Positions 122 through 59,769 of a stretch of DNA of 64,000 bases are shown here, piece after piece. A program made the position numbers and the translations under genes. A model generated the notes under the pieces. It saw only the letters and a program-made list of their open reading frames with translations. It was not told the origin of the DNA and ran no database searches. The first letter of the stretch is position 1; the number at the start of each line of letters is the position of its first letter. This DNA is from Amphiscolops sp. MND2022 (Eukaryota), in contig OZ076412.1 in NCBI GenBank assembly GCA_964187785.1, positions 30,318,001-30,382,000 of the forward strand, read 5' to 3'.

Positions 122-1215
122 GCATGGACTACTGGCAGTATGACACCATTGTGTTCACCTTCAAATTCAAACGTCACCCCACATTTTATGTGAACGTACT
201 TCTCTTGCCTTCTATCATGATGGCCTTTCTATCCATCCTCTGCTTCCTGCTTCCAGTCGAGAGTGGGGAGAAAGTGTCGCTGGGAATTACAGTTTTGCTA
301 TCTCAAGCTGTTCAACTTCTAGTGTTATCAGATGTGTTGCCACCCTCTTCCAAAGATTTCCCAATTCTCGCACAATTCGTGGTCTTTACAATTGTGCTGA
401 TTTCAGGGGTGTAAAAATTTCGACCTGTCGTATTGACAGTCGGCCAACTCGAAGCCCCGATATTTTGAGAAAAAATAAAATGAACCTGATTCATGAATTT
501 CAGAAAAAGCTGAAGTTCCAATATCCGCAAAAGTTGGTTCAATACTCATAGTTGGTTGATGAACATCAAGTAATTTCGGTTTCAATTTTTCAACATTTGC
601 TACTAGTTACCAGAAATCACTACAAATTATTGACACTACAAGTATTTGTTAGGTCGAATAAAAACACTGGAAAACACTTGAATATTAATTTTGTTATATT
701 TAGCTTTTTTGTGCAGATTTCTACATTCTAGATATTTCGACATAGATGTTTTGTAGGTAAAACTAAATTTTACACCACTACGTGGTATGGTATCAGTCTC
801 AGTCGTGACGTCAGTGCTAGTTGTTCGAACTTATCTCACTCCGGAGTGTAAAACTTTTCCTCCACTGGGCGTGAAAGCTGTAAATTCCTACATTATGAAG
901 CTACTTCTCATTCCAACTCTCGATGAAAAAGTTCTCGGAGACGGTCAAAAGCATCAGAAAAGTCGAAAAAAGAGCTCCAATCAAATATCACCTCAGTTTA
1001 AGGCGGCCGAAGCCTCGAGAGTTCAGAGAGGAAATGTAGCTGAAGATAATATACAAAGCAGTGATGTTGACACAATGTCTGAAGATGACAAGAAATTGCG
1101 AAATACTCTGGGCTGGAAACTTTTATCAGAGCTAATTGACCGTTTTGTTCTGATCTTGTACATTACAGCCTTGACGGGTGGATCTATTTACTACATTGTG
1201 GCGCTTTTAACATGA
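122..1215 (+). CDS. Nicotinic acetylcholine receptor-type (cation-selective Cys-loop) subunit, 3' exons encoding M1-M4; the ligand-binding domain lies upstream of the window
   Basis: Exon from acceptor ttag|122: YDTIVFTFKFKRHPTFYVNVLLLPS (pre-M1/M1), LPVESGEKVSLGITVLLS (M2), DVLPPSSKDFPILAQFVVFTIVLIS (M2-M3). Resumes at ~757-797 with VSVVTSVLVVRTY (end of M3), an intracellular loop, and WKLLSELIDRFVLILY (M4), stop at 1215. M3 is interrupted by a ~390-bp insert. Confidence 0.93.
404..780. mobile_element. hAT-type MITE inserted in the nAChR M3 coding sequence, candidate transposon-derived intron
   Basis: Left end CAGGGGTGTAAAAATTT (404-420); right end AAATTTTACACCACTA (765-780) is its degenerate reverse complement. 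The left end matches the TSD-flanked MITE at 11208 at 16 of 17 nt. No clean TSD. Confidence 0.75.
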
Positions 1216-11207: not shown

Positions 11208-11729
11208 CAGAGGTGTAAAAATTTATATTGTATTGCAATATATTGCAATTAAATACAATTAATATATTTATTTAGTTGGAGCAAAAATACAATATATTTA
11301 TTGAAATAAGAGAAATATTGTCAGAGCACTACAATATTTTGCGCAAAAAGTTTATGCAATATAGAAATAAAACTTCATTTAATATGCATTTTAAACGGAC
11401 CTCCAATTCTTCCTGCCAACAAATATGACTGGGTGCCTGGGACTTCCAACTTAGCGGTACGACTTTTCAGCCATGCTCGATTCACCCTTCCTGACTACCG
11501 CAAGGAAACGCTTCCTATTAATTTCGAGAGTGTATTATACAAATAGACAACATTGGGATGTTTGCCTTGTAAATGAATGTTTCTCTGCCCAATAAATAAT
11601 TTCACAATTTATTGTTTTTCTAAAATATTGCAGGACAATAAATACAATATTTTTATTGCTGAAATTGAACCAAACAATATATTTATCTTTTTGAAAAAAT
11701 ATACTTAAATACAATATTTCACACCCCTG
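11208..11729. mobile_element. hAT-superfamily MITE (522 bp)
   Basis: TIRs CAGAGGTGTAAAA / TTTCACACCCCTG with a perfect 8-bp TSD ATGACGTC (11200-11207 and 11730-11737). Confidence 0.92.
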
Positions 11730-12552: not shown

Positions 12553-13868
12553 CAGTTTAACTTCAGTATTACACACCTCGCTGGGAGAAAACGCTCAAGT
12601 ACGTTATTCTGAAGTGTGTATTATAGGCAAAAAAAGACCAAATGATAAAAATCAATTGAAAAAATCAGTTATGGAAGTTTGAACTTTATTCTCCATTATT
12701 GATTTATATATAGCAAGACCGATTTTCTCGGATTGTTGAGCTATATCACCGAGTCCCATTGAGCGCAGCTTCCGAGCAAGTTTTTCGGTATATTCAAAAG
12801 CTTCAAGATCGGAAATTTCCGATTCTTGTATTTCTTCTTCGTTTTCTTCACAATTCTGCTCATCTTCAAGACTGATTTCACAGCTTTCGATCTTCAAACG
12901 ATCCGCAATGATTTTGGCCTGTTGTTAGGGGTGTTTTAATAAATAATTTAAAAGTAAATTAATTTTGAATTAATTTAACAATTATTTCCGCTGTTGAACA
13001 CCCTACCAAAAATCAATCCCCCCTTCAGAGAAATTTTTTTTTGTTTTTTAAAATTTTTGCAATAATTGCATTTATTTATTTTCGTTAAAGAAAGTAAAAA
13101 AGGTTATTTTTGCGTAAAATATTATTGCAAAATATTTTTGAACACCCTTGCCTGTTGTTGAAGCAAAAGACCGCTCACCTCCACTTTATTTCCTCGCATT
13201 GTAACAAACCACATAAAGCTCTTTACCTAACTGGGGATGATCTCCTTGTCGAAGTTTTGTTCGGTTAGAAGGCATATTGGAATGGAACGCGTTGAAAATT
13301 TCTTCTTTTTTGGTAAGAATTGTGTTTAATGATGAAATATTAGGCAGTTGAAACCTCGAAACAATTGCTGCTTTAGCACCCTTTTGTGCTGAAACTTCTT
13401 CATAAGCTTTTATGATTGTAAACTTTTGTTCAATGGTACGTTTCGTACGTTTCGTACGTTTTGTACATTGGGCAGGCATTTTGGAATGAATTAGTAATTT
13501 ATGCGTGTTAAAAGACGCTACATACAATAACACGTGGTTAATAAACTGTTAGTATGCGTGGAAACGATGTGGAGCCGAGCACATTCGGTCTTTTTGTTAC
13601 TTAACAAATAGAGCCGGAGCAAAGATTGCTTTGTTTATGATTGGTTGCGAGACAAATTGCGTAATAGCCGAGTTTGTTTGCATGGCATTTTAGCATTTCG
13701 GCCGAACAATTACGTCACGCTATACTGAATGTTGCTTAAAAGCGCATGTGCGCTTTAAGCGTAATTTTCTAACTTTAATCTTTCAATTCTGTACGCTGGG
13801 GCACAAAATACGTGCGTTATTCTGAAGGTTACACTATAGTGCACGTGTGTGATACTGAAGTTGAACTG
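12553..13868 (-). mobile_element. Internally deleted pogo/Tigger (Tc1-mariner superfamily) DNA transposon
   Basis: 24-bp TIRs CAGTTYAACTTCAGTATYACACAC with TA on both flanks. Minus-strand transposase remnant has CENP-B-type HTH domains (KRTIEQKFTIIK...RTKLRQGDHPQLGKELY...VSGLLLQQQAKIIADRLKI) joined to an acidic tail ending KVQTSITDFFN. The DDE domain is absent. Confidence 0.9.
12926..13150. mobile_element. hAT-type MITE (225 bp) nested in the Tigger transposase
   Basis: Ends TAGGGGTGTT / AACACCCTTG with a perfect 8-bp TSD CCTGTTGT (12918-12925 and 13151-13158). Removing it rejoins LLQQQ-AKIIADRL. Confidence 0.9.
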
Positions 13869-15255
13869 TATTGCTGAATTTCGTTTTATTGCAGCGTCGG
13901 CATTTGAGAACACGCAACATCAGCTGATACATGTATCTGTACCGCTATTCGATTTGTCTATGTGTTTTTACTTTCTGAAAACGTCGTAGAAAGTAGAATA
14001 TTCCACGCCATATCGTTGGAAATTTCGTTTTTGTTTGGTAAGTTGAGTAATACTACGTAGCATTATAACTTTCAGAACTCTTTAATAGTAAAAATCTGTT
14101 TTCAAATACAAATTATACTCTGTTTTCCTATTATTGACTATAGCAATCTTATAATTGCATTTTTTTATTGTTGTTGTTTGTCATTTCAATGCAGTATTGA
14201 CTTAAAAAGAAGTAAAATTGAAGGTAACAATGTCGAAGATAAAAAGCGTCTAGATTTGTGCAACGGCAAACTAAAGTCATAAAGTATCAATACCAACGCG
14301 TTAGTTTTTAGTGGACGCTTTTTGAAAAAAAGGCAGCCCGGGTTGGGGTGGGCCATTGAAATGGCCCCGACCTTTCTGCCATGGGCTATCGATGGACCAT
14401 CGCGATGTTGGTCTGGATACCAAAATCGTCTTTCCAAGGACTCTTTTTATAACATAAGGGCATCAAATCTATTTTGAATGACAGTAAAAGAGACGCAAAC
14501 GACTATTTAATGCCTGTATATTTTTTCCCGATAGATATGAAACAAAATGAACGTTAAAGTAGAAATCTCTTTGGGACACCTGGGGAAAAGCTAATGTCTA
14601 TAATAACCGGTTATTACAGTGATTGGTTTTTCTCCAGATGTCCAAAAGAGATTTCTACTTTTTCGTTCATTTTGTTTCATAACCATCTGGAAAAAATATA
14701 CAGTGCATCGAATAGTAGTTCGCGTCGCTTACAAAGCTAGACGGTACCGGATAGTCCCCCTCGGTGTATCTTTGACGCTCTGTGCCTTTGTTCGAATCTT
14801 CTTTTGAGGGTACCTCTATTTTTTAAAGTTGATCAGGTAAAAAGTCTTCTTTAGCGAAAAACGCTTTGCATGTTTTTTGGCACTGTGAAGAAAAAGAGTT
14901 GAACTATTTTTTGTTGCCCAAGTGCGTACAAACAACAACTTAAAGATCGATATCAGTACTAGAGCACCGAGTAGTTATCGAATGCAAAAACTTTGCAAAA
15001 TTTTTTGCTAAATTCTTATCAGTTAAATGAAAGTTACTTGTGACCTAATAACTAGGCTATAGCTAAATTTAGACTGATTTCATCTTAAATTTAGTTACCT
15101 TACGCACAAATTCATGCTTGTCATGCTGATTTGACTATACATACACATAATTTGTTGCTAAAGGATCATTTTGAAGATATGCACTGCTTACACTCAATAC
15201 ACGATATTGTTCATTTGTCATTCTGACTATTCACTATTGAAATCGCACTTCTCGT

Positions 15256-15909
15256 TTGAATAAGCCCCCATCTAGAAAACAGAAAGCAAAGGAAAAGCGC
15301 TCTAGGCAATCTGACGTGATGTCTGATAATGAAAATCTTGATGTAATGCAAGGGAGTTATCAAGGAAATAACAGAGAAATGCAAGAAGGTAATAGCGACA
15401 ACGAAATGGACGAAAAGTTAAATAGACACGAAAGAAGATCGAATCAAAATGGTGGTGAATTCAGGTCTTACTTGAACACTAATCTTAGTCAGAATAGTGG
15501 TTTAACCGTAGCAACTAGTAGGGCGACTAGCTCAGAAATTTCATCAGAGATGTCTAGAAAACTCGAGGAAATGTCATCTGATCTAAATACACGCATTCTA
15601 GATGCGACTAACACTGCAATTGAGAACAGGATGTTACCGAGCATCAAAAATGCTGTTGGAGGCCAAAATTCAGCTAGAAACACAAATTTGGACCTTCGGT
15701 CAGATGTACCGCATCCAAATAATTTTAGTCAAGTACATTCTCAGGGGACTTTCGGTCTATCGGGCTGCATTCGGAAAATGCTAGCCAGGTGGCTCAGGAT
15801 GCTCAGAAGGACTTCCCGAGATTAGTAGGAATGAGTAGTAACCGGATAAATCACCATGGAGAGAAATAAGTGGATTCTAGTCAAAGTGATGAAGATGAAG
15901 GTTACGACA
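15256..15909 (+). repeat. ORF-containing dispersed repeat (retroelement ORF1/LTR-like, 189-aa ORF), same family as 1907-2464
   Basis: Basic N-terminus (PSRKQKAKEKRSRQSDVMSDNENLDVM) and coiled-coil-like middle homologous to the 1907 copy; ends ...GGTTACGACA. TTG start, no recognisable enzyme domain. Confidence 0.55.
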
Positions 15910-16930
15910 GATTACAATGCAGCTTCCACTATATCAATTAAAACCGAAAAAATTTCCACTTCTTCACCACCGCGATCACATTGTTTTCACGCGTAAGTTC
16001 CTCAAGTAAGTACCTTATGTGATCACTGTTAGTAAAATAGCACGCTGGATATGACGCTACTTTAAAACTTATAGTGTGAGTGAAATTTATTTACATTAAA
16101 ATCGCGGTAAAATTGATGAAGATCTCAGCTGCTTTCAAAATTAGAGCGGCGTCTCAATGAAACCCTCTAAAACTTTGCGGCGCAGAATTGCCGCCAAATT
16201 TAGTATGCATGTCATAGGCAGCTTGATAAAATTAAATCGAATCAGTGAAGTTTTGTTGCAGGGACGCTTCTTTGAGAATTTTATAAAATCATGGAAAATT
16301 AGGTTGGTAACCTACAAAACCATGTAAAAAGTTCAAGCAGTTCCAACCAGGGAATTATTAATGTCATTTGGGTAGTTGCAGTAATATTTAGGTAAAAGTT
16401 CTTTACGCTTATCGTCGGAGCTCTTGCATTTCAAAAACAGATGATACTCATCTGGTTTTACATCGGGTCTCACAAAAGGGGCAGGGCTCTACTGGACAGT
16501 TTAGGAATTTCGATTTTACGTTGGTAGAGCAGTTGCAGCACACCTAAAAATTGCTAGCTTTACTCTTTCTGATCTTAAATGAGTTTCCAAATAGGGTTCA
16601 AAGGCAAGTCGGTATTTATATAGTCGGTGTGTGAATCTCTGCAGAAATGAAAAAACTTCTGTTTTGTCAAAAATAAATTGCTTTTGGCGTTTTTTTATGC
16701 CTAATCAATGCGCGGACTTGGTCCGGATCCGGCTTGCTATATATTAAATTTTGAAAGAATGCAAAATTTGAAAACGAAATAGGAAATGAAGTTTCTGCAA
16801 TAAAGGATAAGAGAGAGCAGAATAACGCTGAGCAGTCTGTCGGGGAAAAAGAATTGCGGAATTGGAACTCCTTTTTCTATTTTGGTCTCTTGGTGAAAAA
16901 CTCCTGTTTCGATGTGTTTTTTTAATGTAG

Positions 16931-18730
16931 ATGGATGCGGCTAATGAAGAAATTGGTCAGATGGATCTGCAATCAAGCCAGCATTTTGCTCAATTGCAAC
17001 GAGATTTCGGAGATCGTCTCAACGAAGAAATGACTTCACAAGTTCAAGCATGGGAATCAACTCAAGTAAATATAGCTGTCATAGGCGAAACATCTGTGGG
17101 CAAATCTTCTCATATCAATGCGCATTTTGGAAGTTATGTCTGCATCGTCGGTCATTCTGGAAACGTTACCCAAGAGGTGACCCCTTATGGACAAACCGGG
17201 CGCATGACTGGATCTAATCCAGGGATATTGAAATGATTATTTTTGAACGATAGTTTCATTGATTGTTCAGAGTCTATTCCTAGAGACTACATTGCAACAT
17301 TTTTCTCTGAAGCTTAGCTATACTAGAATGACCTATTGGTCAACTTAAGGTAACTCTTAGAAGCATCCCGATTGCACTGAAAAATGTTTCCAACATAGAA
17401 AAAAAACGCACTAAGGATTGCTTCAGTGGAATTTGGAATTGATCATCAGAGAACTCCCAATAAACATCAGAGATGTTTGAACTTTTGTGTTTCTGAAATA
17501 TTTTTCGATTCTTGAATTGTATTTCATTTTTGTTGGCTTTTCAATTGTATCAACGAGAGACGGAATCATCAATTTTTCACTTTGATCATCATACTCACTT
17601 TGATCGTTTTCCAATATATTTTTTGAAATCCCTGATTCAATTGAGACACGGATCGATCGGAAGTTTTGGTGTTTTGGGATCTGCCTGGATTCAACACTAT
17701 GGACTACAATAAAGAAACATATAATGGGGTTGTGAAATTAGACCGATATCACTTCTTTTTAATCGTTACTGACAAAATTTTCACCCATGATATTCATTGG
17801 CTTCTGGGCGAAATTCTTCGACGTAATAAGAAATTTTTTCTAATTCGCACCAAGATTGATCAAGCTGTCGAGAGTGCAAGGAAGCATCCTCCCAGACAAA
17901 GTCGGGAGGAAGTTATGGCAGAAATTAGGGGTAAAATTGAAGGAGATCTTAGGAAGAGTTTAGAGGTGTTCAAACGCCAAAACCCCAACGTGAGCTATGC
18001 ATACGACCCCAACTATTTCAAAGTATATTTTGTTGACAACTATGATCCCTCAGATTACGATTTTCGTCAGTTGCGCGAAGATATTTGGGCGTCAATGACT
18101 TCTTTGCAAAAAGAGGTGTATCTAATGCAATGCAGGAGCTACACGGCGCAAATGCGAGATGAAAAATACAAAAACTTCAAATGGAGAATCCCCAAAATCG
18201 CTGCTGGTTCAGCTGCCGGGGCTCCAATTCCGGGAAGCACTTTGCTGTTTGACATTCCCCTGATCACGTATGAAGTATTGCAATACATGAAAGCATTTGG
18301 CGTTGATAAGCAAACAATCCGTGAGATGGAAGTCGACGCTGGATTTGATCCCGGGAGAGTTGAGGATCCATTCGCTAACTTCTTGAAAAGATCTCATAAA
18401 GCTCTATACACGATTCGCGAGACGATTGGCGAGCAGAGATCTGTCACAGTGCCGGGTTTGAGACATCTGGCTCCAATGATACTCGGGGCTCTTTCACTGA
18501 TTGCTGTATCTGGCACTGTCGAAACAACTGCCGAGGCTGCTGTTCCCGTTGTAGGAGTTGCTGTGGCATCTCTTCTCTCATTCGGCACATCTTCAACGCA
18601 ACTCTATTGGCGTAAGTTTTCACCTTCCTTGCAGCTCATTGATTCTTCCTTTTTTGCAGAGAGATGGCATTATACGGTAAAAGCAACATCATTATTTTCC
18701 GTGTTCTGTGCTACTGGAAAATCTTTTTAA
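16931..18730 (+). CDS. Interferon-inducible GTPase (IRG/p47, IRGC-like), coding sequence interrupted by a 423-bp insert; 3' end uncertain
   Basis: G1 NIAVIGETSVGKSSHINA, switch I VTQEVTPY, G3 VFWDLPG, YHFFLIVT, G4 FLIRTKID, and C-terminal AAGSAAGAPIPGSTLLFD helices, all typical of IRG proteins. A GTAAGT donor at 18612 means the true last exon may differ from the read-through ORF. Confidence 0.85.
17220..17634. mobile_element. Old hAT-type MITE (415 bp) inside the IRG coding sequence between G2 and G3
   Basis: Ends CAGGGATATTGAAA / TTTGAAATCCCTG. Degenerate 8-bp TSD ATCTAATC (17212-17219) vs ATTCAATT (17635-17642), 5/8 with three C/T transitions. Removing element plus one TSD (423 nt) fuses the two IRG ORFs in frame. 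Confidence 0.65.
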
Positions 18731-19709
18731 CATCTTTAACACCCCTTCTTGTCTATAACTTGACGTAACGAAACGGGGTTACGCTACGATTGCTTGCATA
18801 AGTGCACATGAACAAACAAAAAACACAGCTTCCTTGGAAACAGACATTTATAGAGCACAAATTAATTTGCCAAAAAAAGTCTTGAATTCTTCCGAAACAC
18901 AAACACGACTAAGCTTGACTGTCAACCGATTGATCGCTACAGAGAGCAGCACTATCAGTTAAAAAATACTTCCATTTGCGCGAAAACACTGTAAGTAAAG
19001 TGGATATCTCAACTAAGTACCATTTAATTTCCTAGAAGATAGAAATGAAAAATCTGGAACGAAGTTTTGGTCTCGCAGAGTCAAACTATGTCATTTAGAA
19101 TTCATGATTAGAAATCCCGCAACGGAGAACGTGAATTGCGCAAAACGGTGAGTTGTTGTTGCTGAGAATATGAGAACGGATATACCGACCTTGATGGTCA
19201 GTTTTGTCGTCCTCAAAAGAAAACATAAGACTAATGAATTCTATGGTCGGATGACTGCATGAAAAAAAAACATTCCCACAGTGATAGGTGTGTTACCAAT
19301 GGCATCTTCACGAAAACGAATGAACATTCAAGCAAGTTTGTGGGGAGATACGGCCTCGTAGAAAGGAGGAAAGAGGGTTTTTCAGAGATTTTTTGTTTTT
19401 CCAGGCTGCATTGACTTTCTGATGATCTTCACTAGACTTGTTTGCATTTTCTACTGACTGAAATGGTGTTAAGATCCCTAAATCTACGGTTAAAGCAAAT
19501 GGTCTGTAACAAAATCTTCAACTATATTCTTTCGAAACTGTGGCATGGGTGCTTTTTAGAGGTCACATCATACATTACATGACAATATGACCTTTTTATG
19601 TTATGATGTAAAAGTACCTGCCAATACTGATAGCTATGATTACATTAGTAGCTATAAAAGTAGGAACCCTGGGTCACTTTTGCTCCGTTTTTATTCGGCA
19701 TGCGGAATT

Positions 19710-19812
19710 GATTCGTCGCTCGGGAAAAACGTTGATTCGGCAGTAGGAAATGATTCGTCGCTCGGGAAAAACGTTGATTCGGCAGTCGGAATTAATTCGG
19801 CGCTTGGGAAAA
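19710..19812 (+). repeat. 42-bp minisatellite (~2.5 units); duplicated at 24079-24181
   Basis: GATTCGTCGCTCGGGAAAAACGTTGATTCGGCAGTAGGAAAT x2 plus a degenerate third partial unit. Confidence 0.9.
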
Positions 19813-21449
19813 GGCCGGGCGGTTACCTTGGAATAAGGACAGTTGATGTGGGACTTAAATAGGTGTGGCTTTATTTCTCACGTTGTGGTCTTTTATGTGT
19901 GCAGCACCATTTGATGTTTTCACCACTTGCGCTGAGGCGAATTCTCAAGTAGTTCTTGTTTACAAATCGTAAAAGGTTTGACTTGCGTGTCAATAAAGAG
20001 GGTGCATGTCGTTTCCAATATTTTGAGACGGCAAAAGTTATTTCATCAAGACGTTGTTATCATCGAGTGACTTCAAGAGATTAATTGAATAATTGGGTCA
20101 ATATGTTAACTAACAGTGAGAAATACGTTTCCGAGGTCAATTCAGAAAATTTTTTTGAGAAAACACTGAATCCATAAAAGGAGAAATCTGGATTTCAAAG
20201 AGATCTGTAAGTCGCTTTCGCCAAAAAAGAACGTAATTTTTTACTTGGGGGACTGCCTTCAGACTCTTGTGATGGTGAAAATAGAGTGTAAACTCAATCC
20301 ACGCGGGGGACATAAGTTCGAGAGTAATCGCCACCACTTTCGAGTAACATTAATAAAAATAGATCATCTTGAATAGCTACAGCTATTATAGTGAAGATTT
20401 TCTGCAAATATAGTGAAAACCACTTCAAGTTATGGAACTGCATCTGAAGTCTTTGGTAAAGTATATACCAATTAAGAATGTTTGCACCATAGCACCTTCT
20501 TAAAATGAGTTTTAGCAAACATTTTAGTACTTCAAATCCTATGAATTATGGAGTTGGTATTAAAAATACAACTACTTCATTCCTACGTTTCGACATAGCC
20601 GGAGAATACAACCAGCTCTACATGATACGGGAAGCTAGATTCCAGAAGTTGAATGTTTCAATAAATGTTCAAAAGACAAATTAAAACTTCAGGTTGTTAT
20701 ATCTAGTCATTACAAGAAGTGATTTGCATACTTTTTAATTACCAACAGTATTACAGGTATCCCTATTGTATACCAACGAACAGACAGATACTATTTCAAA
20801 GGATGGCTCGAACAGTTTATGAGTGACAACACTTTTGGATTCCTGTGGTGGTTAATTGATAATTCTTACCTGTTTCAAGGTAAAACGGGTAAGTTGAAAG
20901 CACGAGTTTTTAAAAAAATTAAATATCTCAATACATTTCAACATGTTCAAGGTGAAAAACTTAAATGGATTATGGTGGAAAATTTAACAACAGGACAACC
21001 AATAAACCGACTTTCGTACAATGTAATTCGTTCCAATGTTGACGGTTGTTGACGAGTTGAAAGAATTGAGTGATCTAATTGCAGTGAACCGTCAGAATAG
21101 TAATGGACTTTGTTGTGAGAAAAATCAAAGATGGAATGTTTCAAATTCGGAAAGAATACCCAAGAATACTAACAAGAGCCCCATATGCGGTAAAGGAGTC
21201 GGCTCAAGTCTTTTTCCTCCAATCCCAGATATACGAATTTATTGAAATTGCACACATAGACCATACCATGGTTTAGAAAAAGACTGTAGAAATTTTCGTT
21301 CGAATCGTATGGACTGTTTTTGCGAACACAAAACTGTTGAAACATAACTGTTTTTTGGCCATTTTTGGGCTAATTTTGGCTATGTTTCTCACATCCCAGC
21401 CATACAATGTTGACGCCATTGCACATATAGGACTCTAAAAAGGTGTAGA

Positions 21450-22575
21450 ATGACTGTAGAAATGTTCATTTGAATCGTATGGGAAAAAACGTTTTACTTG
21501 CTCTTGAAAGGCTCCACTGTTCTGTTTTCCGGCAATTTTGTGAAAATATCGGGAATAAAAACTGCAGTCTTCATATTCGATAATTATATAGTACCTAGAG
21601 CAACATATTCAAAAGGCAAATTGCCACTTCGGGCGAGGACTTGAAACAAGGACTTTTTTGAGAAAGTCGAAGAAAGTCGAAAAATGACGGTTTTTTGGCC
21701 ATTTTTGGCTAATTTTGTCTATGTTTCGCACATCCCAGCCATACAATTTTGAGGCCTTTGAGCAGGCAGCCCCTCCTTTGGGTTTAGAATGACTCTGCAA
21801 AAATATTTGTCAGTTATTGAGAAATTTGAAATTTTCATGAAAAGGTCAGTAGAAAAGAAAACATAAAAACGACACGATTGCATAAGTAGTCGAAAATTTT
21901 TTCCGACTCCTAACAAAAACTATTCACTGTTCGTGTTTGAAGGTTATAGAAAGTGATGATAGAATATTACAAGTTGTGCTTGATTGAAAGAAAAAAACAC
22001 TGAACTATGACCAAGAGGAAGGTGTTGTCAACCAATTTTTCCAACCATTGTAATTTTTCTCAATACAATTTCAAAAAAGCCAACCGACTATCATAAGTTT
22101 TAACTGTTATCAAAACCGTTCTTCTTCGAAAAATCCAAAAATTTTGTTTCAAAGTCTTAGAAACGCTTCAAAATTACGTTTACAGGTAACACACAAAGTT
22201 TTTTGGTCAATACCTAGTTCAAGAAGAGATGGTAATGTTGGGGGGAACTAACAATGGTAGTTTAACAAGGAAGACCATACTTTTGGAAGTAAAACAAACT
22301 AATGAAACATCGACTATTGACACAGATCTCAAGTAAGTAAAATACTCAAATTTTTATACTGTTTCAAGTACTCACCCCAAGTGGCAATTTGACTTTTGAA
22401 AATGTTGCTCCAGGTACTATATAGTTTTTTATATATGGAGAGTGCAGTTTTCATTCCCGATACTTTAACACAAATTTTCCAGAAAACAGAACAGTGGAGC
22501 CTTCGTTTGGACAGTAACTTTTCAAGAGCAAATGAAACGTTTTTTTTCCATTCCGCCGTTCATATTCGAGCAAAA
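21450..22575. mobile_element. Foldback-like element with ~200-bp imperfect inverted arms (duplicated at ~25845-26965)
   Basis: 21450-21640 (…GGCTCCACTGTTCTGTTTTCC…AAAACTGCAG…GGCAAATTGCCACTT) is the reverse complement of 22370-22575 (AAGTGGCAATTTG…TGCAGTTTT…GAAAACAGAACAGTGGAGCC). Exact ends and TSD not resolved. Confidence 0.65.
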
Positions 22576-22853: not shown

Positions 22854-22980
22854 GGGGCTCTTCCACTGATTGCTGTATCTGGCACTGTCGAAACAACTGC
22901 CGAGGCTGCTGTTCCCGTTGTAGGAGTTGCTGTGGCATCTCTTCTTTCATTCGGCACATCTTCAACGCAACTCTATTGAC
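22854..22980 (+). pseudogene. Duplicated 3' fragment of the IRG exon carrying a premature stop
   Basis: Copy of 18485-18611; TGG (Trp) has become TGA just before the GTAAG donor. Confidence 0.85.
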
Positions 22981-25900
22981 GTAAGTTTTCACCTTCCTTG
23001 CAGCTCAATGATTCTTCCTTTTTTGCAGAGAGATGGCATTATACGGTAAAAGCAACATCATTATTTTACGTGTTCTGTGCTACTGGAAACGCTTTTAAAC
23101 ATCTTCAACACCCCTTCTTGTCTATTACTTGACGTAACGAAACGGGGTTACGCTACGATTGCTTTCATAAGTGCACATGAACAAACAAAAAACACAGCTT
23201 CCCTGGAAACAGACATTTATAGAGCACAAATTAATTTGCCAAAAAAGTCTTGATTTCTTCCGAAACACAAACACGACTAAGCTTGACTGTCAACCGATTG
23301 ATCGCTACAGAGAGCAGCACTATCAGTTAAAAAATACTTCCATTTGCGCGAAAACATTGTAAGTAAAGTGGACATCTCAACTAAGTACCATTTAATTTCC
23401 TAGAAGATAGAAATGAAAAATCTGGAACGAAGTTTTGGTCTCGCAGAGTCAAACTATGTCATTTAGAATTCATGATTAGAAATCCCGCAACGAAGAACGT
23501 GAATTGCGCAAAACGGTTAGTTGTTGTTGCTGAGAATATGAGAACGGATATACCGACCTTGATGGTCAGTTTTGTCGTCTTCAAAAGAAAACATAAGACT
23601 AATGAATTCTATGGTCGGATGACTGCATGAAAAAAAAAACATTCCCACAGTGATAGGTGTGTTACCAATGGCATCTTCACGAAAACGAATGAACATTCAA
23701 GCAAGTTTGTGGGGAGATACGGCCTCGTAGAAAGGAGGAAAGAGGGTTTTTCAGAGATTTTTTGTTTTTCCAGGCTGCATTGACTTTCTGATGATCTTCA
23801 CTAGACTTGTTTGCATTTTCTACTGACTGAAATGGTGTTAAGATCCCTAAATCTACGGTTAAAGCAATTGGTCTGTAACAAAATCTTCAACTATATTCTT
23901 TCGAAACTGTGGCATGGGTGCTTTTCAGAGGTCACATCATATATTACATGCCAATATGACCTTTTTATGTTATGATGTAAAAGTACCTGCCAATACTGAT
24001 AGCTATGATTACCTTAGTAGCTATAAAAGTAGGAACCCTGGGTCACTTTTGCTCGGTTTTTATTCGGCATGCGGAATTGATTCGTCGCTCGGGAAAAACG
24101 TTGATTCGGCAGTAGGAAATGATTCGTCTCTCGGGAAAAACGTTGATTCGGCAGTCGGAATTAATTCGGCGCTTGGGAAAAGGCCGGGCGGTTACCTTGG
24201 AATTAGGACAGTTGATGTGGGTATTTACAGTTGAAATTCAGAATGATTTAAATAGGTGTGGCTTTATTTCTCACGTTGTGGGCTTTATGCGTGCAGCACC
24301 ATTTGATGTTTTTACCACTTGCGCTGAGGCGAATTCTCAAGTAGTACTTGTTTACAAATCGTAAAAGGTTTGACTTGCGTGTCGATAAAGAGGGTGCATG
24401 TCGTTTTCAATATTTTGAGACGGCAAAAATTATTTCATCAAGACGTTGTTATCATCGAGTGACTTCAAGAGATTAATTGAGTAATTGGGTCAATATGTTA
24501 ACTAACAGTGAGAAATTTGTTTCCGAGGTCAATTCAGAATATTTTTTTGAGAAAACACTCAATCCATAAAAAGAGAAATCTGGATTTCAAAGAGATCTGT
24601 AAGTCGCTTTCGCCAAAAACGAACGTAATTTTTTTACTTGGGGGACTGCCTTCAGACTCTTGTGATGGTGAAAATAGAGTGTTAACTCAATGCACGCGGG
24701 GAACAAAAGTTCGAGGGTAATCGCCACCACTTTCGGGTAACGTTAATAAAAGTAGATCATCTTGAATGGCTACAGCTATTATAGTGAAGATTTTCTGCAA
24801 ATATAGTGAAAACCACTTCAAGTTATGGAACTGCATCTGAAATCTTTGGTAGAGTATATACCAATTAAGAATGTTTGCACCATAGCACCTTCTTAAAATG
24901 AGTTTTAGCAAACATTTTAGTACTTCAAATCCTATGAATTATGGAGTGGTGATTAAAAATACAACTACTTCATTCCTACGTTTCGACATAGTCGGAGAAT
25001 ACAACCAGCTCTACATGATACGGGAAGCTAGATTCCAGAAGTTGATTGTTTCAATACATGTTCAAAAGACAAATTAAAACTTCAGGTTGTTATATCTAGT
25101 CATTACAAGAAGTGATTTGTATACTTTTTTATTACCAACAGTATTACAGGTATCCCTCTTTTATACCAACGAACAGACAGTTACTATTTCAAAGGATGGC
25201 TCGAACAGTTTATGAGTGACAACACTTTTGGATTCCTGTGGTGGTTAATTGATAATTCTTACCTGTTTCAAGATAAAACGGGTAAGTTGAAAGCACGAGT
25301 TTTTGAAAAAAATTAAATATCTCAATACATTTCAACATGTTCAAGGTGAAAAACTTAAATGGATTATGGTGGAAAATTTAACAACAGGACAACCAATAAA
25401 CCGACTTTCGTACAATGTAATTCGTTCCAATGTTGACGGTTGTTGACGAGTTGAAAGAATTGAGTGATCTAATTGCAGTGAACCGTCAGAATAGTAATGG
25501 ACTTTGTTGTGAGAAAAATCAAAGATGGAATGTTTCAAATTCGGAAAGAATACCCAAGAATACTAACAAGAGCCCCATATGCGGTAAAGGAGTCGGCTCA
25601 AGTCTTTTTCCTCCAATCCCAGATATACGAATTTATTGAAATTGCACACATAGACCATACTATGGTTTAGAAAAAGACTGCAGAAATTTTCGTTCGAATC
25701 GTATGGACTGTTTTTGCGAACACAAAACTGTTGAAACATAACTGTTTTTTGGCCATTTTTGGGCTAATTTTGGCTATGTTTCTCACATCCCAGCCATACA
25801 ATGTTGACGCCATTGCACATATAGGACTCTAAAAAGGTGTAGAATGACTGTAGAATTGTTCATTTGAATCGTATGTGAAAAAACGTTTTATTTGCTCTTG

Positions 25901-27996
25901 AAAGGCTCCACTGTTCTGTTTTCCGGCAATTTTGTGAAAATATCGGGAATAAAAACTGCAGTCTTTATATTCGATAATTATATAGTACCTAGAGCAACAT
26001 ATTCAAAAGGCAAATTGCCACTTCGGGCGAGGACTTGAAACAAGGACTTTTTTGAGAAAGTCGAAAAAAGTCGAAAAATGACGGTTTTTTGGCCATTTTT
26101 GGCTAATTTTGTCTATGTTTCTCACATCCCAGCCATACAATTTTGAGGCCTTTGAGCAGGCAGCCCCTCCTTTGGGTTTAGAATGACTCTGCAAAAATAT
26201 TTGTCAGTTATTGAGAAATTTGAAATTTTCATGAAAAGGTCAGTAGAAAAGAAAACATAAAAACGACACGATTGCATAAGTAGTCGAAAATTTTTTCCGA
26301 CTCCTAACAAAAACTATTCACTGTTCGTGTTTGAAGGTTATAGAAAGTGATGATAGAATTTTACAAGTTGCGCTTGATTGAAAGAAAAAAACACTGAACT
26401 ATGACCAAGAGGAAGGTGTTGTCAACCAATTTTTCCAACCATTGTAATTTTTCTCAATACAATTTCAAAAAAGCCAACCGACTATCATAATTTTTAACTG
26501 TTATCAAAACCGTTCTTCTTCTAAAAATCCAAAAATTTTGTTTCAAAGTCTTAGAAACGCTTCAAAATTACGTTTACAGGTCACACACAAAGTTTTTTGG
26601 TCAATACCTAGTTCAAGTAGAGATGGTAATGTTGGGGGGAACTAACAATGGTGGTTTAACAAGGAAGACCATACTTTTGGAAGTAAAACAAACTATTGAA
26701 ACATCGACTATTGACTCAGATCTCAAGTAAGTAAAATACTCAAATTTTTAAACTGTTTCAAGTACTCACCCCAAGTGACAATTTGCCTTTTAAATATGTA
26801 GCTCCATGTACTATATAGTTATTATATATGGAGACTGCAGTTTTCATTCCCGATACTTTCACACAAAATTTCCAGAAAACAGAACAGTGGAGCCTTCGTT
26901 TGGACAGTAACCTTTCAAGAGCAAACAAAACGTTTTTTCCCATTCCGCCATTCATATTCGAGCAAAATTCGATTTTGTTGTCTCAAGATTGAACTCATCA
27001 ATTACCGTAACCCCAGTCTAATCTTATCTGGATGGAGACAACTTACAGGGACACGAACAAGCTCCTTGGATCCTATTTTTACACTTTGTAGAGAGCGTAA
27101 AAAGTGAATATGGAATAACCCTCTATGCCATGAATCATGCCCTAATTACATGACTTGGTGATACTTACTTGAACTCTTTCAGCGTTTCCTAAAGCATGTG
27201 TTAGAATCAAAAGTCAATGCATGGGATAAGTTTTAGTTTATTAAAGCTTTCGTTCCAATTCAATCAGTGAAGAATATGTTGAAATTCAATAATTTATGAC
27301 TTCTAACTAACGAAGTCATGTTGTCAAAGACTTGTTAAAAAACCTTACGAGGAAATAATGAAACTAAGAGATCAAGACTCAATAATTTGAAATGAATTTC
27401 GTTGCATTTAAAATTTTTTCCAAAAGAAGATGACTTTCTCGATGATTAAGGTTAATCAACTATAAGAATAACTATGAACATGAATAATGTTTTAAGACTT
27501 CGGGTTGAATCGATAATCACTAGTGTTTTGTACCATTCTAGTGTCGAGAAAAAAGCAACTTCTTGAGTTCAAGAAAAACTCCACTTTGACTGAACCTTGC
27601 AAGTCAACTAATCTTTTTCGAGAAGAGGTCATATTCTGAGATCAAAAAATACCTTAAAACAACTACAACTATAACTATACATAAACAAATACTAAATGAG
27701 TTAATTTAAGCTCCCTAGATTATAATTTTCAGTAGAAACAGTCTCTCTGGGGTCAAGAACAGAATTTTTGGAAAAACTACAAGAAGTTCGCAGAATACCT
27801 CGGAACATGCACAATCGTAAATTCCATGTGAACAAGATTGTAACAGGGAAACACATATTTAATATTGCGACCAATAGGAAGTGACTATCGCGAATTTCCA
27901 AGATTTTGATCAATACCCAATAAACTTTTCTGAAAAACAGACTGAAAATTTCTGTTTGAAAATTTTATACTCTCCCTTTGCAGTCGCTCCTCAATT

Positions 27997-41400: not shown

Positions 41401-44400
41401 TATCCTAGAATGGCAAGTTTTGGAAAATGATCAGTTAAACACTTACCAGGCAGTTGTTTTTACTTCAGGGTTTTGTGCAATGACATGAAAGCTGTAACGA
41501 ATTAAATATGGAAGAAGCTGCCGACTTGGTTCATCATATTCATAAAACTTACAGTGCGGGAAAATACTGAAAAGAAACATCAAATTTTTTTGTTTTTTTG
41601 GAGTCTTACAGTGCCGAAATACTTTTTCTACAAAAAATCTATCAGTTCCACAGGATCCAAAATAATCAAAGGTCATTGTTTCTGCTAAAAATCAAGAGCG
41701 TGGCACGTTTATAAATTCAGAAAAAAATCATACAATGCCGAAAAACACCAAGGGGCCCTCTACATCGGCAAATATAAAATTTTTTGATTTAGTACGAGAC
41801 TCTAACCCAAGCTTCCTGCTTCTCTGGCCTCAAAAAATCCGGGTTAACCTCTTGGCCACGTGGCATTTAGAAGTTACTGTAAACTATTTACTGCTATAGC
41901 GGGCTTGTACTTCGTGAGCGCTGACTGAAGAAAAAACACGCTTGAGCATACGTAAGGATCTTAGTGCTTTGTGAGCCCCGACCGAGCGGGGTTAAATTTG
42001 AGACGGTCCATTTTGTGATAGCTTTCAACAGAAACAAAAGAATGGTTTTTTGTGAATGCCAAACAAAACGTTGAATTCACAAGTCAGGAACATTTTTTGA
42101 AATGACAGTTTGATGGTTTACAATAGGTTTCGGATAACAACGATACTTCCTCATTTCTTACTATTGGAAAACAGATTGTTGAGTTTTGCTTTAGATAGGC
42201 AAGATTCATTCAATTTGGACGGCTCTGCAGGGCAAGATAACTGATGGAACTTGGGCGCAGAGCGTTCACTGCTCGTTTTTTGTGATCGAAAATTAGAGCG
42301 ACAAGAAAAGTGGAAATCCAAGTCGAATGAGTGACCATTTCCATTATGTGGAACCTCGTCATCCTTCACTAAACGTAAAGGGAATTGCTTTGAGTACGAA
42401 GTGAAGCACTTTTGAAAACGGAAGGGACAAGTATATGAAAAAAGGAGTATATACAAGAAGATCAAGTATATGGAAAATCAGACAAGAAAAGTTGAAAAAT
42501 ATACAAAGCCCCTATCTAAAAAATTGCTGCATACAAACTTTGTATCTTTGATTCAGATAACTTTTGGAATAAGCAAAGTGAACACTTATTCTGAAAACGC
42601 GCCCCTTGAATATTCACCCATATCACATAACGCAGTCTTCTATTTTTGCTCAGTAAGAATATTGTTTCGAAGGTATTAAAACAGTTTTTGCTGTTCATTT
42701 TCCGAAAGTTAAAATTGAAAGTTGAAGAAAAGTGTCAAGGCTATAATGAGGGTTCTTCTGACCAGCCGTTTTTGAGATATCGCTTAGATTCAAAAAATCC
42801 AAAATTCCTCATCATGTTTAACTTTTCCGGATTACATTTAAAACAAAAAAATCGGTAATTTTGATCAAAATCTGAGAAACTTTCGCTCCTGGTACTTTTT
42901 AGTCAAACGCATGTCCTAAAGAAAATGTGATATGAGCTGTATTTGGCTTTATTTTTTCCAATGAAATTAAGCAGTTGAAACGAATATCTCCTAGATGAAG
43001 TCAAAACATTGGTTGTATGACTCGGCCTTCCTTCTTCCGATGTGCTTCCCTCTCTCCAGATCAAACTTCGTCAAAACCAGCCACTGGATCAGTAGTGGCA
43101 CGTCATTCCGCTTCACTTCTGGATTTAGGGTACTATCAGCATGGGAAAGTAGCTAATCTGATTCCCCAATTTAGATTTTAACTTGGAAGATTTTGACCTG
43201 ATATCGTGTAGTACATTGCGATGGTGTGGGGAAGTTCAACAAAATCTCTTCAACAAAGTAGAAATATCGACAGAAGTTGGAAAAAGCCCATTCCAACTTG
43301 AAGATTGTTGCCATGGAGTTACTTTTCGTGAAAATTGAAATATTTGGTCTGAAGAGGCAATAAAGAATGCCATTGATGAATGAATTTTTCGATACTTTGT
43401 TCTGAGAAAATAACTGCCAAATTACTGCAATTAGTTCGATTATTGATGTGAAGCACCGATCAATTTCAATAAATAGATTTTGTCACAGAAAATATTGCTA
43501 AGGCAGCGTTTTTCAAAACTCTTACACGTCATTCTCAAGTTTGTCGTTTCGAGTTACTTATGATCTTTTTTGTTTCAGTTCTGTCTTCAGCATACGCTGC
43601 AAACGAGTGGATCGAGAAGAATACTGCCAACTTTACATAAAATTATTCATTTACTTCATTTCGACTGCTTACATTGCCTATTGCCGTCACTGAAGTTTCG
43701 AACTAAAACAGAACTAAGTACCTGCATGGGGTTCTTTCTGAAAGACCATTTTATTGAAGTTTCTGGTGTCGTTCCTCTTACTCATCTACTAATATCAAAC
43801 GTCAGACAAGTAAAAATGCTTTGATCAACTGTTTTGTATTTCCCAACCAAAGCGTCCACATTCATCTACTTTCATTTCTTCAACTGATGAATCTAATGAA
43901 AAAACACGTAATATTGTTCTGAATGGAATTTCATATTTGAAAATGGAAAATCATTGCTTCAAATGACTTCAAATATCAGTTCAAAGTTTGTAAAAGATTA
44001 TATATGCATCTCAGATGCATATTTCTCACCTGCCCTTTTGTAAATATATTCACACGTGTTTTTAGTTTTCCCACATCCTGTTTTAATTGTTAAACACAAG
44101 TTTACCGAAAATGATTTTTCCTTTTCTAATACTTTTTTGATTGATGGAGCGGCCTGGTCAGCCGTAAAAAATCATGGCTCTTTTCTGTTTCCCCCTCCCC
44201 ACCACCAAAATTTTTGAAAATATCTTTCCTTAAAAACTTTAGACTTTAGACCTAATTAAAAGTAAAACCTTACTTCATAAAAGGAAGTTAACTTCCATTA
44301 GGGTAGTTTTCCGCGTGAACAAAACATTGTTCATACTTTTGACTATAATTTTGTTCGTATTAAGTGTTTATTGATGATTCAAAACGAAGCTGTTGATTTC

Positions 44401-49226: not shown

Positions 49227-49276
<50 letters not shown>

Positions 49277-59692: not shown

Positions 59693-59695
59693 TTT

Positions 59696-59718
59696 TGGTG
59701 CCGCGCTTACCCAGGAAT
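59696..59718 (+). other. Primer-binding site of the BEL element
   Basis: TGGTGCCG directly after the LTR's CA, complementary to a tRNA 3' end (…CGGCACCA, tRNA-His-like). Confidence 0.6.
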
Positions 59719-59769
59719 TTCGAAACTTGGAAATTCAATCTATTGAACAGAAGGATTATTAAATTTGAA

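What the first reader, a model, noticed from the sequence alone, without database searches (positions are those of the whole stretch)
17212..17650. A second exonic hAT-type MITE, in the IRG GTPase, is removable only as a GG-AG segment
Seen: CAGGGAT…ATCCCTG with a degenerate 8-bp TSD lies between switch I and the DLPG motif and contains an in-frame stop (17234-17236). Removing 17223-17645 (423 nt; CCAG|GGATAT … TTGAG|AC) gives …TPYGQTGRMTGSNPDTDRSEVLVFWDLPG in frame. I found no GT donor that keeps both switch I and the frame; only a weak GC option at 17202 exists. The downstream 354-aa ORF is intact although the TIR and TSD look old, which suggests the gene stayed under selection after insertion (inference).
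Basis: partly seen in the sequence, partly recalled or inferred. Interest (0 to 1): 0.75.

Follow-up and report, generated by a model that had tools for sequence, protein, structure and literature searches.

The report
Transposon-like insert splitting an immune GTPase gene
A 415-base transposon-like insert sits inside the coding exon of an immune (IRG-type) GTPase gene and can leave the message in frame only as an intron starting with GG instead of GT, but no RNA data exist and the gene now appears to be evolving without constraint.

Summary
An IRG/IIGP GTPase gene (exon 1 16931-17222, exon 2 17646-18611) is interrupted between switch I and DLPG by about 423 nt carrying an in-frame stop. Three homologues from another organism read straight through this site. 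The insert ends in CAGGGAT/ATCCCTG (arms 21/32 alike), flanked by an 8-nt repeat matching 5/8. At these homology-defined boundaries that is unlikely by chance (about 0.1-1%).

No GT donor keeps the frame. Of six G-starting candidates, only 17223 (CAG|GGA) has the exonic AG and +3 A seen at working GG donors in a copepod. Its acceptor (17644-45) follows an 86-nt AG-free stretch.

- No related copy of the insert was found anywhere searchable, so a "MITE family" is unsupported.
- Continued selection is not supported. Three haplotypes all carry the insert, their coding differences are 8 non-synonymous to 3 synonymous, and one haplotype has a nonsense codon plus a frameshift.

No RNA run exists. 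My verdict is a transposon-born GG-AG intron (0.5) against an insertion-killed young pseudogene (0.4). Earlier notes of this scan report similar GG-AG introns elsewhere in this genome.

The parts
16931..17222 (+). Exon 1 of the IRG/IIGP GTPase: start codon, P-loop GETSVGKS and switch I (..VTQEVTPYGQTG..), up to the proposed donor
   Evidence: ORF and translation. Pfam MMR_HSR1 26.2 bits; IIGP 23.1 bits, just under its cut-off. Aligns to the N-termini of P0002-P0004.
17212..17219 (+). Left copy of the putative 8-nt target-site duplication (ATCTAATC), inside codons S-N-P
   Evidence: matches 17635-17642 at 5/8 positions
17220..17251 (+). 5' inverted-repeat arm: perfect core CAGGGAT (17220-26), then degenerate. 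The first 3 nt (CAG) would become exonic.
   Evidence: arms 21/32 alike in register, 11/16 over the first 16; terminal helix in both the MFE and centroid folds
17223..17645 (+). Proposed GG-AG intron, 423 nt, phase 1 (CAG|GGATAT ... CAATTGAG|AC)
   Evidence: frame-keeping enumeration. The length equals element 415 + repeat 8. The GG and both ends are identical in the second haplotype and unvaried in 4 DNA runs.
17234..17236 (+). In-frame TGA that ends the exon 1 reading frame if the insert is retained
17559..17643 (+). AG-free, pyrimidine-leaning stretch before the acceptor, with branch-point-like CTCAC / TTGAT motifs
   Evidence: 86 nt between successive AGs; only 0.8% of AG-to-AG gaps in the window are this long; 62% pyrimidine in the last 50 nt
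17603..17634 (+). 3' inverted-repeat arm (core ATCCCTG at 17628-34)
17635..17642 (+). Right copy of the putative target-site duplication (ATTCAATT), intronic in the splice model
17644..17645 (+). Proposed acceptor AG, made of host sequence just after the right repeat copy
   Evidence: The residues encoded from 17646 (DTDRSEV) resemble ESDRNEV of P0002, so coding resumes here.
17646..18611 (+). Exon 2: DLPG (G3), TKID (G4) and the helical domain
   Evidence: Pfam IIGP E=1.3e-22, 80.8 bits; 69-75% identical to P0002-P0004
18612..18659 (+). Likely canonical 48-nt GT-AG intron (GTAAGT...TTTTTTGCAG)
   Evidence: the GTAAGT/GTTAGT donor motif lies at the same place in all three homologues. Caveat: P0002 and P0003 have an in-frame stop (CGT TAG) inside that motif, so they may simply end there.
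18660..18730 (+). Short C-terminal exon, not conserved. The second haplotype has a 4-nt insertion at its first base, which shifts the frame.
17192..17192 (+). Polymorphic site: C>T turns CAA (Q) into TAA (stop) in the contig of run X2 (a second individual)
18028..18031 (+). T4 run that is one T shorter in run X2 (frameshift in exon 2)

Best explanation
**What happened (inferred).** An old, now degenerate hAT-like element landed in the loop-coding part (between switch I and DLPG) of the large coding exon of an IRG-family GTPase gene. The element is 415 nt and has an 8-nt target duplication, 423 nt in total.

**How it is removed (inferred, not shown).** I think it has been removed from the mRNA as a spliceosomal intron with a non-canonical GG donor.
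- The first three bases of the element's inverted repeat (CAG) serve as the exon end.
- The intron starts at G|GA (17223).
- It ends at the first AG after an 86-nt AG-free tract (17644-45), made of host sequence just past the duplicated target.
- So 3 transposon bases are exonised, and 3 host bases plus the duplication are intronised. The frame and the 12-residue loop length are kept (N-R-D becomes N-P-D).
- The 7-bp terminal helix may bring the two splice sites together.

**Present state (shown).** The gene is evolving with little or no constraint, and at least one allele is null. Any function is weak, dispensable or recently lost.
For: 1. **Insertion into a formerly continuous exon.** P0002-P0004 read through the site with loops of 9-12 residues, and the splice model gives 12, with S-N-x-D as in P0004.
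2. **Transposon-like ends at the homology-defined boundaries.** The combination has a chance probability of about 1%, or 0.06-0.25% with the YARNG end.
3. **A degenerate signature, unlike young elements here.** Three bona fide hAT MITEs in the same window have perfect 8/8 duplications. The 5/8 duplication and 11/16 arms here therefore point to an old event. No piece of the insert recurs at >=88% in four DNA runs.
4. **An intact frame despite that age.** If the insertion is that old, an untouched 418-codon frame is unlikely without selection: 5.7% at 5% neutral divergence and 0.6% at 10%, counting substitutions only.
5. **Donor context.** Only donor 17223 has an exonic AG and A at +3, the features Robertson found nearly obligatory at working GA/GG donors in Eurytemora (PMC5714493).
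6. **GG is original.** The +2 G pairs with C17630 in the repeat, so GG is not a decayed GT.
7. **Acceptor context.** It follows an AG-free stretch of a length reached by only 0.8% of AG gaps in the window.
8. **Same geometry in the nAChR-like gene.** The other exonic hAT-like insert of the window also has an in-frame, phase-1 CAG|GG...AG solution.
9. **Ends invariant.** Donor, arms and acceptor are identical in both haplotype contigs and in run X2's contig (a second animal) over the part of the insert it spans (from 17271).
Against: - No RNA run holds the locus, so nothing shows that the splice occurs.
- The donor is weak beyond +3 (GGAUAU against GUAAGU).
- The gene shows no sign of present constraint. 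There are 8 non-synonymous to 3 synonymous differences among haplotypes, so omega <=0.2 is rejected at p about 0.035. Non-synonymous divergence (8 differences over about 980 sites, 0.8%) is about equal to synonymous (3 over about 280 sites, 1.1%) and insert (0.95%) divergence.
- Derived changes hit invariant positions: P-loop T>L, and P>S.
- One haplotype has Q>stop and a 1-nt deletion, and another has a frameshifted tail.
- The age argument rests on 8+8 bases of putative duplication.
- The insert has no known relatives, so its transposon nature is inferred from its ends alone. Window-wide, equally loose TIR/TSD pairs are as common in random controls: 10 against 9-14.
Confidence: 0.5

Rival explanations
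1. Insertion-killed pseudogene. The insert, transposon or not, simply broke the only copy of this IRG subfamily fairly recently, within about 1-1.5% neutral divergence. It is not spliced. The two halves are still open only because too little time has passed. The in-frame GG-AG path is a coincidence helped by the CAGGG consensus of hAT ends.
For: - The polymorphism pattern is neutral-like: 8 non-synonymous to 3 synonymous.
- Exon and insert divergence between haplotypes are equal.
- Derived changes fall at invariant residues in each haplotype.
- One sampled individual carries a stop codon plus a frameshift.
- The lesion count across three haplotypes is about what I estimate for neutral decay over about 1.7% of total branch length (my estimate from the simulation rates).
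- An intact ORF is expected at <=1% divergence (57%, substitutions only).
- A GG donor is unproven in this species, and none of the acoel genome papers I checked mentions non-GT donors.
Against: - A young hAT insertion should have a perfect 8-nt duplication, as the three real MITEs of the window do; this one has 5/8.
- No source or sister copy >=88% alike was found in four DNA runs.
- Several features would all be coincidences: the frame (1 in 3), AG|GGA at the donor, and the 86-nt AG-free tract before the in-phase acceptor (0.8%).
- The window's branch is not accelerated in dN relative to the homologues (0.11 against 0.07-0.12, derived), so any loss of constraint is recent.
Confidence: 0.4
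2. The insert is spliced, but at other sites: GC at 17202, GA at 17190/17211/17235 or GG at 17199 as donor, and/or the AG ending at 17663 as acceptor.
For: All these pairs keep the frame without a stop. With acceptor 17663, the distance from the switch I threonine to VxFWDLPG equals that of mouse IRGs (alignment). A donor at 17190 would place the X2 nonsense site inside the intron.
Against: - None of these donors has an exonic AG.
- Donors upstream of 17199 would delete all or part of TPYGQTG, which is conserved in the homologues.
- D-R-x-E-V after 17646 matches P0002, and 17660-17697 recurs elsewhere in the genome, so coding resumes before 17663.
Confidence: 0.05
3. The insert is not a transposon at all. 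It is unique-sequence filler or an intron gained by another route, and the 7-nt inverted repeat and 5/8 flanking repeat are chance. This concerns origin only; either fate above could follow.
For: The insert is single-copy at every sensitivity available and has no internal likeness to known hAT MITEs of the window. Loose TIR/TSD pairs are common window-wide in random controls.
Against: At the homology-defined boundaries the combination is rare: about 1%, or 0.06-0.25% with YARNG. The arms stay alike in register for 32 nt (21/32), including a shared AACGAT block.
Confidence: 0.15

Closest known systems
GA/GG-donor introns of the copepod Eurytemora affinis (Robertson 2017, PMC5714493) and G*-AG introns of Oikopleura dioica
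   Same: The intron starts with G followed by a non-T/C base. It has an obligate exonic AG and A at +3 (here CAG|GGA), a normal AG acceptor, and a species-specific, recently gained position.
   Different: Those cases are proven by spliced RNA reads and occur in about 10-12% of introns. Here there is no RNA. The lineage is different (earlier notes of this scan call it an acoel; I did not test that), and the intron carries transposon-like ends.
MITE-derived non-canonical introns of Fritillaria borealis (Henriet et al. 2019, as summarised in PMC11282704; also PMC13326754)
   Same: A short element with terminal inverted repeats inserted into coding sequence and removed by the spliceosome despite non-GT/AG ends. 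The paired ends could bring the splice sites together.
   Different: Fritillaria uses mostly AG-AC/AG-AT ends and has large families of related introns. Here the ends are GG-AG and the insert is single-copy.
Introner elements (Micromonas, Aureococcus and others; reviewed in PMC11282704; Gozashti et al. 2022 cited there)
   Same: One splice site is carried by the element and the other recruited at or beside the target-site duplication, so the insertion is neutralised at once.
   Different: Introners are defined by hundreds to thousands of near-identical copies and give canonical GT-AG ends. Neither holds here.
Polymorphic IRG pseudogenes in vertebrates (general knowledge of the family, not tested here)
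   Same: A fast-turnover immune GTPase family in which null alleles and decaying copies are common.
   Different: This gene appears to be the only member of its subfamily that the word-index protein search found in this organism's assemblies. It is broken, if broken, by an insertion that leaves both halves open.

Membership tests
IRG / IIGP interferon-inducible-type GTPases (Pfam PF05049) | Significant match to the IIGP profile | tested here: met
   Exon 2: 80.8 bits against a cut-off of 24, E=1.3e-22. Exon 1: 23.1 bits (just under) plus MMR_HSR1 26.2 bits. The intact homologue P0002 matches Irgb10/Irga6 chains at E about 1e-23.
IRG / IIGP interferon-inducible-type GTPases (Pfam PF05049) | G1 GxxxxGKS, G3 DxxG, G4 (N/T)KxD | tested here: met
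   GETSVGKS, DLPG and TKID are read directly from the translations.
hAT-superfamily non-autonomous element (MITE) | 8-bp target-site duplication | tested here: inconclusive
   ATCTAATC against ATTCAATT, 5/8. Bona fide hAT MITEs in the same window have 8/8.
hAT-superfamily non-autonomous element (MITE) | Terminal inverted repeats with a YARNG end | tested here: met
   CAGGG at both ends; 7 nt perfect, 11/16 and 21/32 in register.
hAT-superfamily non-autonomous element (MITE) | Member of a multi-copy family | tested here: not met
   No other copy in the window. None >=88% alike in 4 DNA runs. No likeness to three window MITEs or the nAChR insert. Exact 21-mer scan of JGI metagenomes and insert-ORF protein search both blank. 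A sensitive whole-genome search was not possible.
hAT-superfamily non-autonomous element (MITE) | Empty site in related genes | tested here: met
   P0002-P0004 (L001-L003) are uninterrupted across the site.
Spliceosomal intron with non-canonical GG donor | Spliced junction seen in RNA | not testable with these tools
   No RNA run holds the stretch. No transcript-derived full-length protein is in the collection.
Spliceosomal intron with non-canonical GG donor | Exonic AG before the donor and A at +3 (Eurytemora rule) | tested here: met
   CAG|GGA at 17220-17225; the five other G-start donors lack the exonic AG.
Spliceosomal intron with non-canonical GG donor | Credible 3' splice site that restores the frame | tested here: met
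   First AG after an 86-nt AG-free tract (0.8% tail). Phase 1 matches the donor. The loop length of 12 residues matches the homologues.
Spliceosomal intron with non-canonical GG donor | Host gene kept under purifying selection since the gain | tested here: inconclusive
   Long-term dN is much lower than the saturated dS, and the ORF is intact in two haplotypes. But present polymorphism is neutral-like and one allele is null.
Introner elements | Many near-identical copies serving as introns in unrelated genes | tested here: not met
   The insert is single-copy at the available sensitivity.
Pseudogene | Disabling lesions and omega near 1 | tested here: inconclusive
   If unspliced, the insert is itself disabling. 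hapC has a stop plus a frameshift. Non-synonymous to synonymous is 8:3 (neutral expectation 78% non-synonymous). But hapA and hapB keep 418 open codons.

The most novel reading that the evidence does not exclude
In this lineage (earlier notes of the scan suggest an acoel), hAT-type elements whose inverted repeat begins CAG|GG act as ready-made introns. The spliceosome would accept G at +2 when the exon ends in AG and the element's terminal helix holds the two splice sites together, so exonic insertions are neutralised on arrival. On this reading, the IRG insert is an old example whose 7-bp terminal helix and AG-free 3' tract were kept by selection while the rest of the element decayed.
Probability: 0.35. 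Interest if true: 0.75.

Novelty: new variant of a known kind. Interest (0 to 1): 0.5.

Why it matters
If the splice is real, this is one more case of intron birth by DNA-transposon insertion in an animal, using a donor (GG) that is almost never functional elsewhere. It would lie in a phylum for which the genome papers I could search say nothing about non-GT introns.

It would show how a relaxed 5' splice-site rule lets coding exons tolerate transposon hits. It would also mean that standard gene finders mis-annotate such genes in this genome; here the gene calls on the public metagenome assembly split the gene into 101-aa and 343-aa ORFs.

If the splice is not real, the locus is an ordinary young pseudogene of a fast-turnover immune gene family. 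It then serves mainly as a caution: an open frame on both sides of an insert is weak evidence for selection when haplotype divergence is only about 1%.

Tried and rejected
- **RNA evidence:** the run search found only four DNA-type runs of one study, so expression and splicing could not be tested. The single read-laying run was used on DNA contigs.
- **An apparent anomaly, now withdrawn:** those contigs suggested zero variation inside the insert. The full second-haplotype contig shows 4 SNPs and one indel there, so I drop that idea.
- **Local trough in haplotype divergence** (0.6-1.8% against 2-5% in the flanks). I considered it as evidence for a young insertion or a sweep. I set it aside because the left half of the insert has about 1.5% and pairwise coalescence times vary that much by chance.
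- **dN/dS against homologues:** synonymous sites are saturated (pS about 0.8), so it is uninformative for the time since insertion.
- **Searches for other copies of the insert:** window BLAST, an exact 21-mer in JGI metagenomes, a protein search with the 63-aa ORF of the insert and earlier findings by sequence were all blank.
- **Search for other split copies** with the 101-aa exon 1 ORF found only the gene itself.
- **Functional RNA inside the insert:** Rfam found nothing on 16500-19000 or on the whole window, and there are no tRNAs.
- **GT-AG, GC-AG and U12-type solutions:** no GT keeps the frame, GC at 17202 lacks any consensus context, and there is no ATATCC/GTATCC motif.
- **Independent test case in the window:** the M20 peptidase paralogue pair has an intron in one copy only, but it is canonical GT-AG, so it neither helps nor hurts.
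- **Not done, by rule:** the joined (spliced) protein model was never sent to a search or folding tool. Exons were searched apart by reference, and joining was done only in local frame enumeration.
Full report
**1. What is there.**
Reading 16600-19000 and listing ORFs shows a 101-codon ORF from ATG 16931 that ends at TGA 17234-36, and a long ORF running from 17645 to 18730.
- Pfam places both in the IRG/IIGP GTPase family. Exon 2 scores 80.8 bits (E=1.3e-22). Exon 1 scores 23.1 bits for IIGP and 26.2 for MMR_HSR1.
- The G1 (GETSVGKS), G3 (DLPG) and G4 (TKID) motifs are present.
- Between switch I and DLPG lie about 423 nt of non-coding sequence.
- Its ends are CAGGGAT (17220-26) and ATCCCTG (17628-34).
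- The flanking 8-mers ATCTAATC and ATTCAATT match 5/8.

**2. It is an insertion into a once continuous exon.**
A word-index protein search with exon 2 found three full-length relatives (P0002-P0004, 69-75% identical, 417-448 aa). All come from another ENA assembly (ERZ26859043; loci L001-L003).
- All three read straight through the site.
- Between TPYGQTG and EVLVFWDLPG they have 9-12 residues.
- The junction S-N-P-D resembles S-N-A-D of P0004, and DTDRSEV resembles ESDRNEV of P0002.
- The homologues share the GTAAGT/GTTAGT donor motif of a likely 48-nt canonical intron at 18612-18659. One caveat: P0002 and P0003 have an in-frame stop (CGT TAG) inside that motif, so they may simply end there. 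On this reading the ancestral gene had one large exon plus a short tail exon, and the 423 nt were gained in the window's lineage.
- Synonymous sites between the window gene and these relatives are saturated (pS about 0.8), while dN is 0.18-0.23. The window's dN branch (about 0.11) is not longer than that of P0004.

**3. Is it a transposon?**
- A perfect 7-nt inverted repeat somewhere within the homology-allowed boundaries is common by chance (17.6%). Adding a >=5/8 flanking 8-mer makes it about 1%. Adding the hAT-type YARNG end makes it 0.06-0.25%.
- The arms stay alike in register for 32 nt (21/32).
- The terminal helix appears in both the MFE and centroid folds, although the fold as a whole is not unusual (z -0.69).
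- The window holds three unmistakable hAT MITEs with perfect 8/8 duplications: 11208-11729, 12926-13150 and 50311-50763. Markov controls gave none with 8/8. So hAT MITEs with CAGNG ends are real and recent in this genome.
- Against that background the IRG insert is degenerate (5/8, 11/16) and internally unrelated to all of them and to the nAChR insert (z<1).
- Equally loose TIR/TSD pairs are as frequent in random controls across the whole window (10 against 9-14). The signature therefore counts only because it sits exactly where the homologues say the insertion is.
- No other copy was found in the window. No piece >=88% alike was found in four DNA runs, although that tool did pick up 34-38-nt look-alikes of neighbouring sequence. 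The JGI 21-mer scan, the insert-ORF search and the earlier-findings search were also blank.

I conclude the ends are hAT-like and probably old. A 'MITE family' is not demonstrated.

**4. How could it be removed?**
Enumerating every frame-keeping, stop-free removal gives only two AG acceptors, with exon starts at 17646 and 17664. Both are phase 1. No GT donor works. The six G-start donors are:

| Donor | Position | Exonic AG before it |
|---|---|---|
| GA | 17190 | no |
| GG | 17199 | no |
| GC | 17202 | no |
| GA | 17211 | no |
| GG | 17223 | yes (CAG\|GGA) |
| GA | 17235 | no |

- Only 17223 follows an exonic AG and has A at +3. These are the two features Robertson reports as obligate or nearly so at RNA-verified GA/GG donors in Eurytemora (PMC5714493).
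- The +2 G pairs with C17630 in the repeat, so GG is original to the element and not a mutated GT.
- The acceptor AG (17644-45) is the first AG after 86 nt without one. Only 0.8% of AG-to-AG gaps in the window are that long.
- Motifs like those upstream of the canonical intron's acceptor (CTCA..TTGAT) lie 40-55 nt upstream (read).
- Element (415) plus duplication (8) equals the intron length (423), shifted by 3 nt. Three transposon bases (CAG) become exon, and GAG of the host plus the duplication become intron. This changes the inferred N-R-D to N-P-D.
- The other exonic hAT-like insert of the window, in the nAChR-like gene, has the same phase-1 CAG|GG...AG solution. There 390 nt are removed and the M3 helix is restored.

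**5. Is the gene still under selection?**
There is no RNA, so I used haplotypes.
- **hapA** is the window, identical to ENA contig ctg181651 (L004).
- **hapB** is a second contig of the same assembly (ctg179058, L005), found through cluster membership.
- **hapC** is the Logan contig of run X2, from a second animal.

All three carry the insert, and the donor, arms, duplication and acceptor are identical in hapA and hapB and show no variant in run X2's contigs.

Divergence between hapA and hapB:

| Segment | Differences |
|---|---|
| Exon 1 | 5 SNPs in 292 nt |
| Insert | 4 SNPs + 1 indel in 423 nt |
| Exon 2 | 7 SNPs in 966 nt |
| Flanks | 2-5% |

- Between hapA and hapB the coding differences are 8 non-synonymous to 3 synonymous. 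The differences seen in the DNA-run contigs also number 8 to 3. The neutral expectation is 78% non-synonymous; omega <=0.2 is rejected at p about 0.035 and omega 0.1 at 0.0016.
- Non-synonymous divergence (8 differences over about 980 sites, 0.8%) is about equal to synonymous (3 over about 280 sites, 1.1%) and insert (0.95%) divergence.
- Polarised with the homologues, each haplotype has its own derived changes at invariant positions. hapA has N>Y. hapB has P-loop T>L and P>S. hapA and hapB share W where the homologues have K.
- hapC has CAA>TAA at 17192 and a 1-nt deletion at 18028.
- hapB has a 4-nt insertion at the first base of the tail exon, but that tail is not conserved in the homologues.

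An open frame is also weak evidence at this depth, since 57% of sequences stay intact after 1% neutral divergence.

**6. Weighing.**
For splicing:
- The insertion looks old (degenerate duplication and arms, no relatives), while young hAT insertions here are perfect.
- An intact 418-codon frame after >=5% neutral divergence is unlikely (<=5.7%).
- The donor and acceptor context is the best possible for a GG intron.
- Two of two exonic inserts in the window share the geometry.

For a dead gene:
- Polymorphism is neutral-like.
- One allele is null.
- The age estimate rests on 16 bases.
- The transposon call rests on the ends alone.

A reading that fits everything is an old insertion that was spliced, in a gene that has recently lost constraint. 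The simpler alternative is a fairly recent insertion with an imperfect duplication that killed the gene. I put 0.5 on the first, 0.4 on the second, and the rest on other splice sites.

**7. Relation to what is known.**
- GG/GA donors at about 10-12% of introns are documented in Eurytemora (PMC5714493).
- MITE-born non-canonical introns are documented in Fritillaria, and introners in algae and others (PMC11282704, PMC13326754).
- In the acoel genome papers I could search (Symsagittifera, Xenoturbella, Hofstenia) I found no mention of non-GT donors.
- Earlier notes of this scan report GG-AG introns, several with paired hAT-like ends, in other genes of this genome, and call the genome acoel-like. 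Those are unverified AI notes on other loci, also without RNA. I used them as context only and did not test the taxon. The window's GC of about 37% is compatible with the 36.7% reported for S. roscoffensis.

**8. Limits.**
- There are no RNA data.
- A whole-genome DNA search for relatives of the insert was not possible.
- Haplotype C is known only from short-read contigs.
- The spliced model was never sent to a search or folding tool.

Noticed in passing
window 11208-11729, 12926-13150, 50311-50763: Three clear hAT-type MITEs with perfect 8-bp target duplications (ATGACGTC, CCTGTTGT, CCTGTACT) and CAGNG/TAGGG-type ends. The first shares its terminal repeat (CAG.GGTGTAAAA) with the insert in the nAChR-like gene at 404. 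The third lies about 110 nt upstream of the start of an M20 peptidase gene.
   Followed up: partly
window 18485-21730 and 22854-26124: A segmental duplication, 96.9% identical, that copies the last 127 nt of IRG exon 2, the 48-nt intron and the tail. The copy has TGG>TGA in the last tryptophan codon. It is a gene fragment.
   Followed up: partly
window 56382-57818 (-) and 48125-50193 (-): Two M20/M25/M40 peptidase paralogues, about 60% identical. One is an uninterrupted 479-codon ORF. The other carries one canonical GT-AG intron of about 650 nt (49187-49832) that contains (CT)n/(GT)n microsatellites. This is an intron presence/absence pair with normal splice sites.
   Followed up: partly
window 404-796: The insert in the nAChR-like gene can be removed in frame as CAG|GGGTGT ... 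TATCAG|TC (407-796, 390 nt, phase 1), restoring an M3-like helix ...FVVFTIVLISVSVVTSVLVV.... This is the same geometry as the IRG insert.
   Followed up: partly
window 15036-21482 against L005: The two haplotype contigs of the same animal differ by 0.6% to 5% in a mosaic along 6.5 kb. The lowest values lie across IRG exon 2 and the highest 1.5-3 kb away on both sides.
   Followed up: partly
window 43566-43636; L001 5075-5145; L002 5350-5420: A 71-nt stretch about 81% identical between this window and the DNA 1.4-3 kb downstream of two IRG homologues in the other organism's assembly. It has no Rfam or tRNA match. It may be a conserved short repeat or an unknown small RNA.
   Followed up: partly
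window 17660-17697: A 38-nt piece encoding EVLVFWDLPGFNT recurs elsewhere in the genome (>=88% alike, all four DNA runs) in a different context. An in-frame stop soon follows, so it is probably a decayed fragment of another IRG copy.
   Followed up: no
window 59695-62866: Gag-like (DUF1759), aspartyl protease, reverse transcriptase and Pao-type peptidase ORFs on the + strand: a BEL/Pao-type LTR retrotransposon.
   Followed up: no
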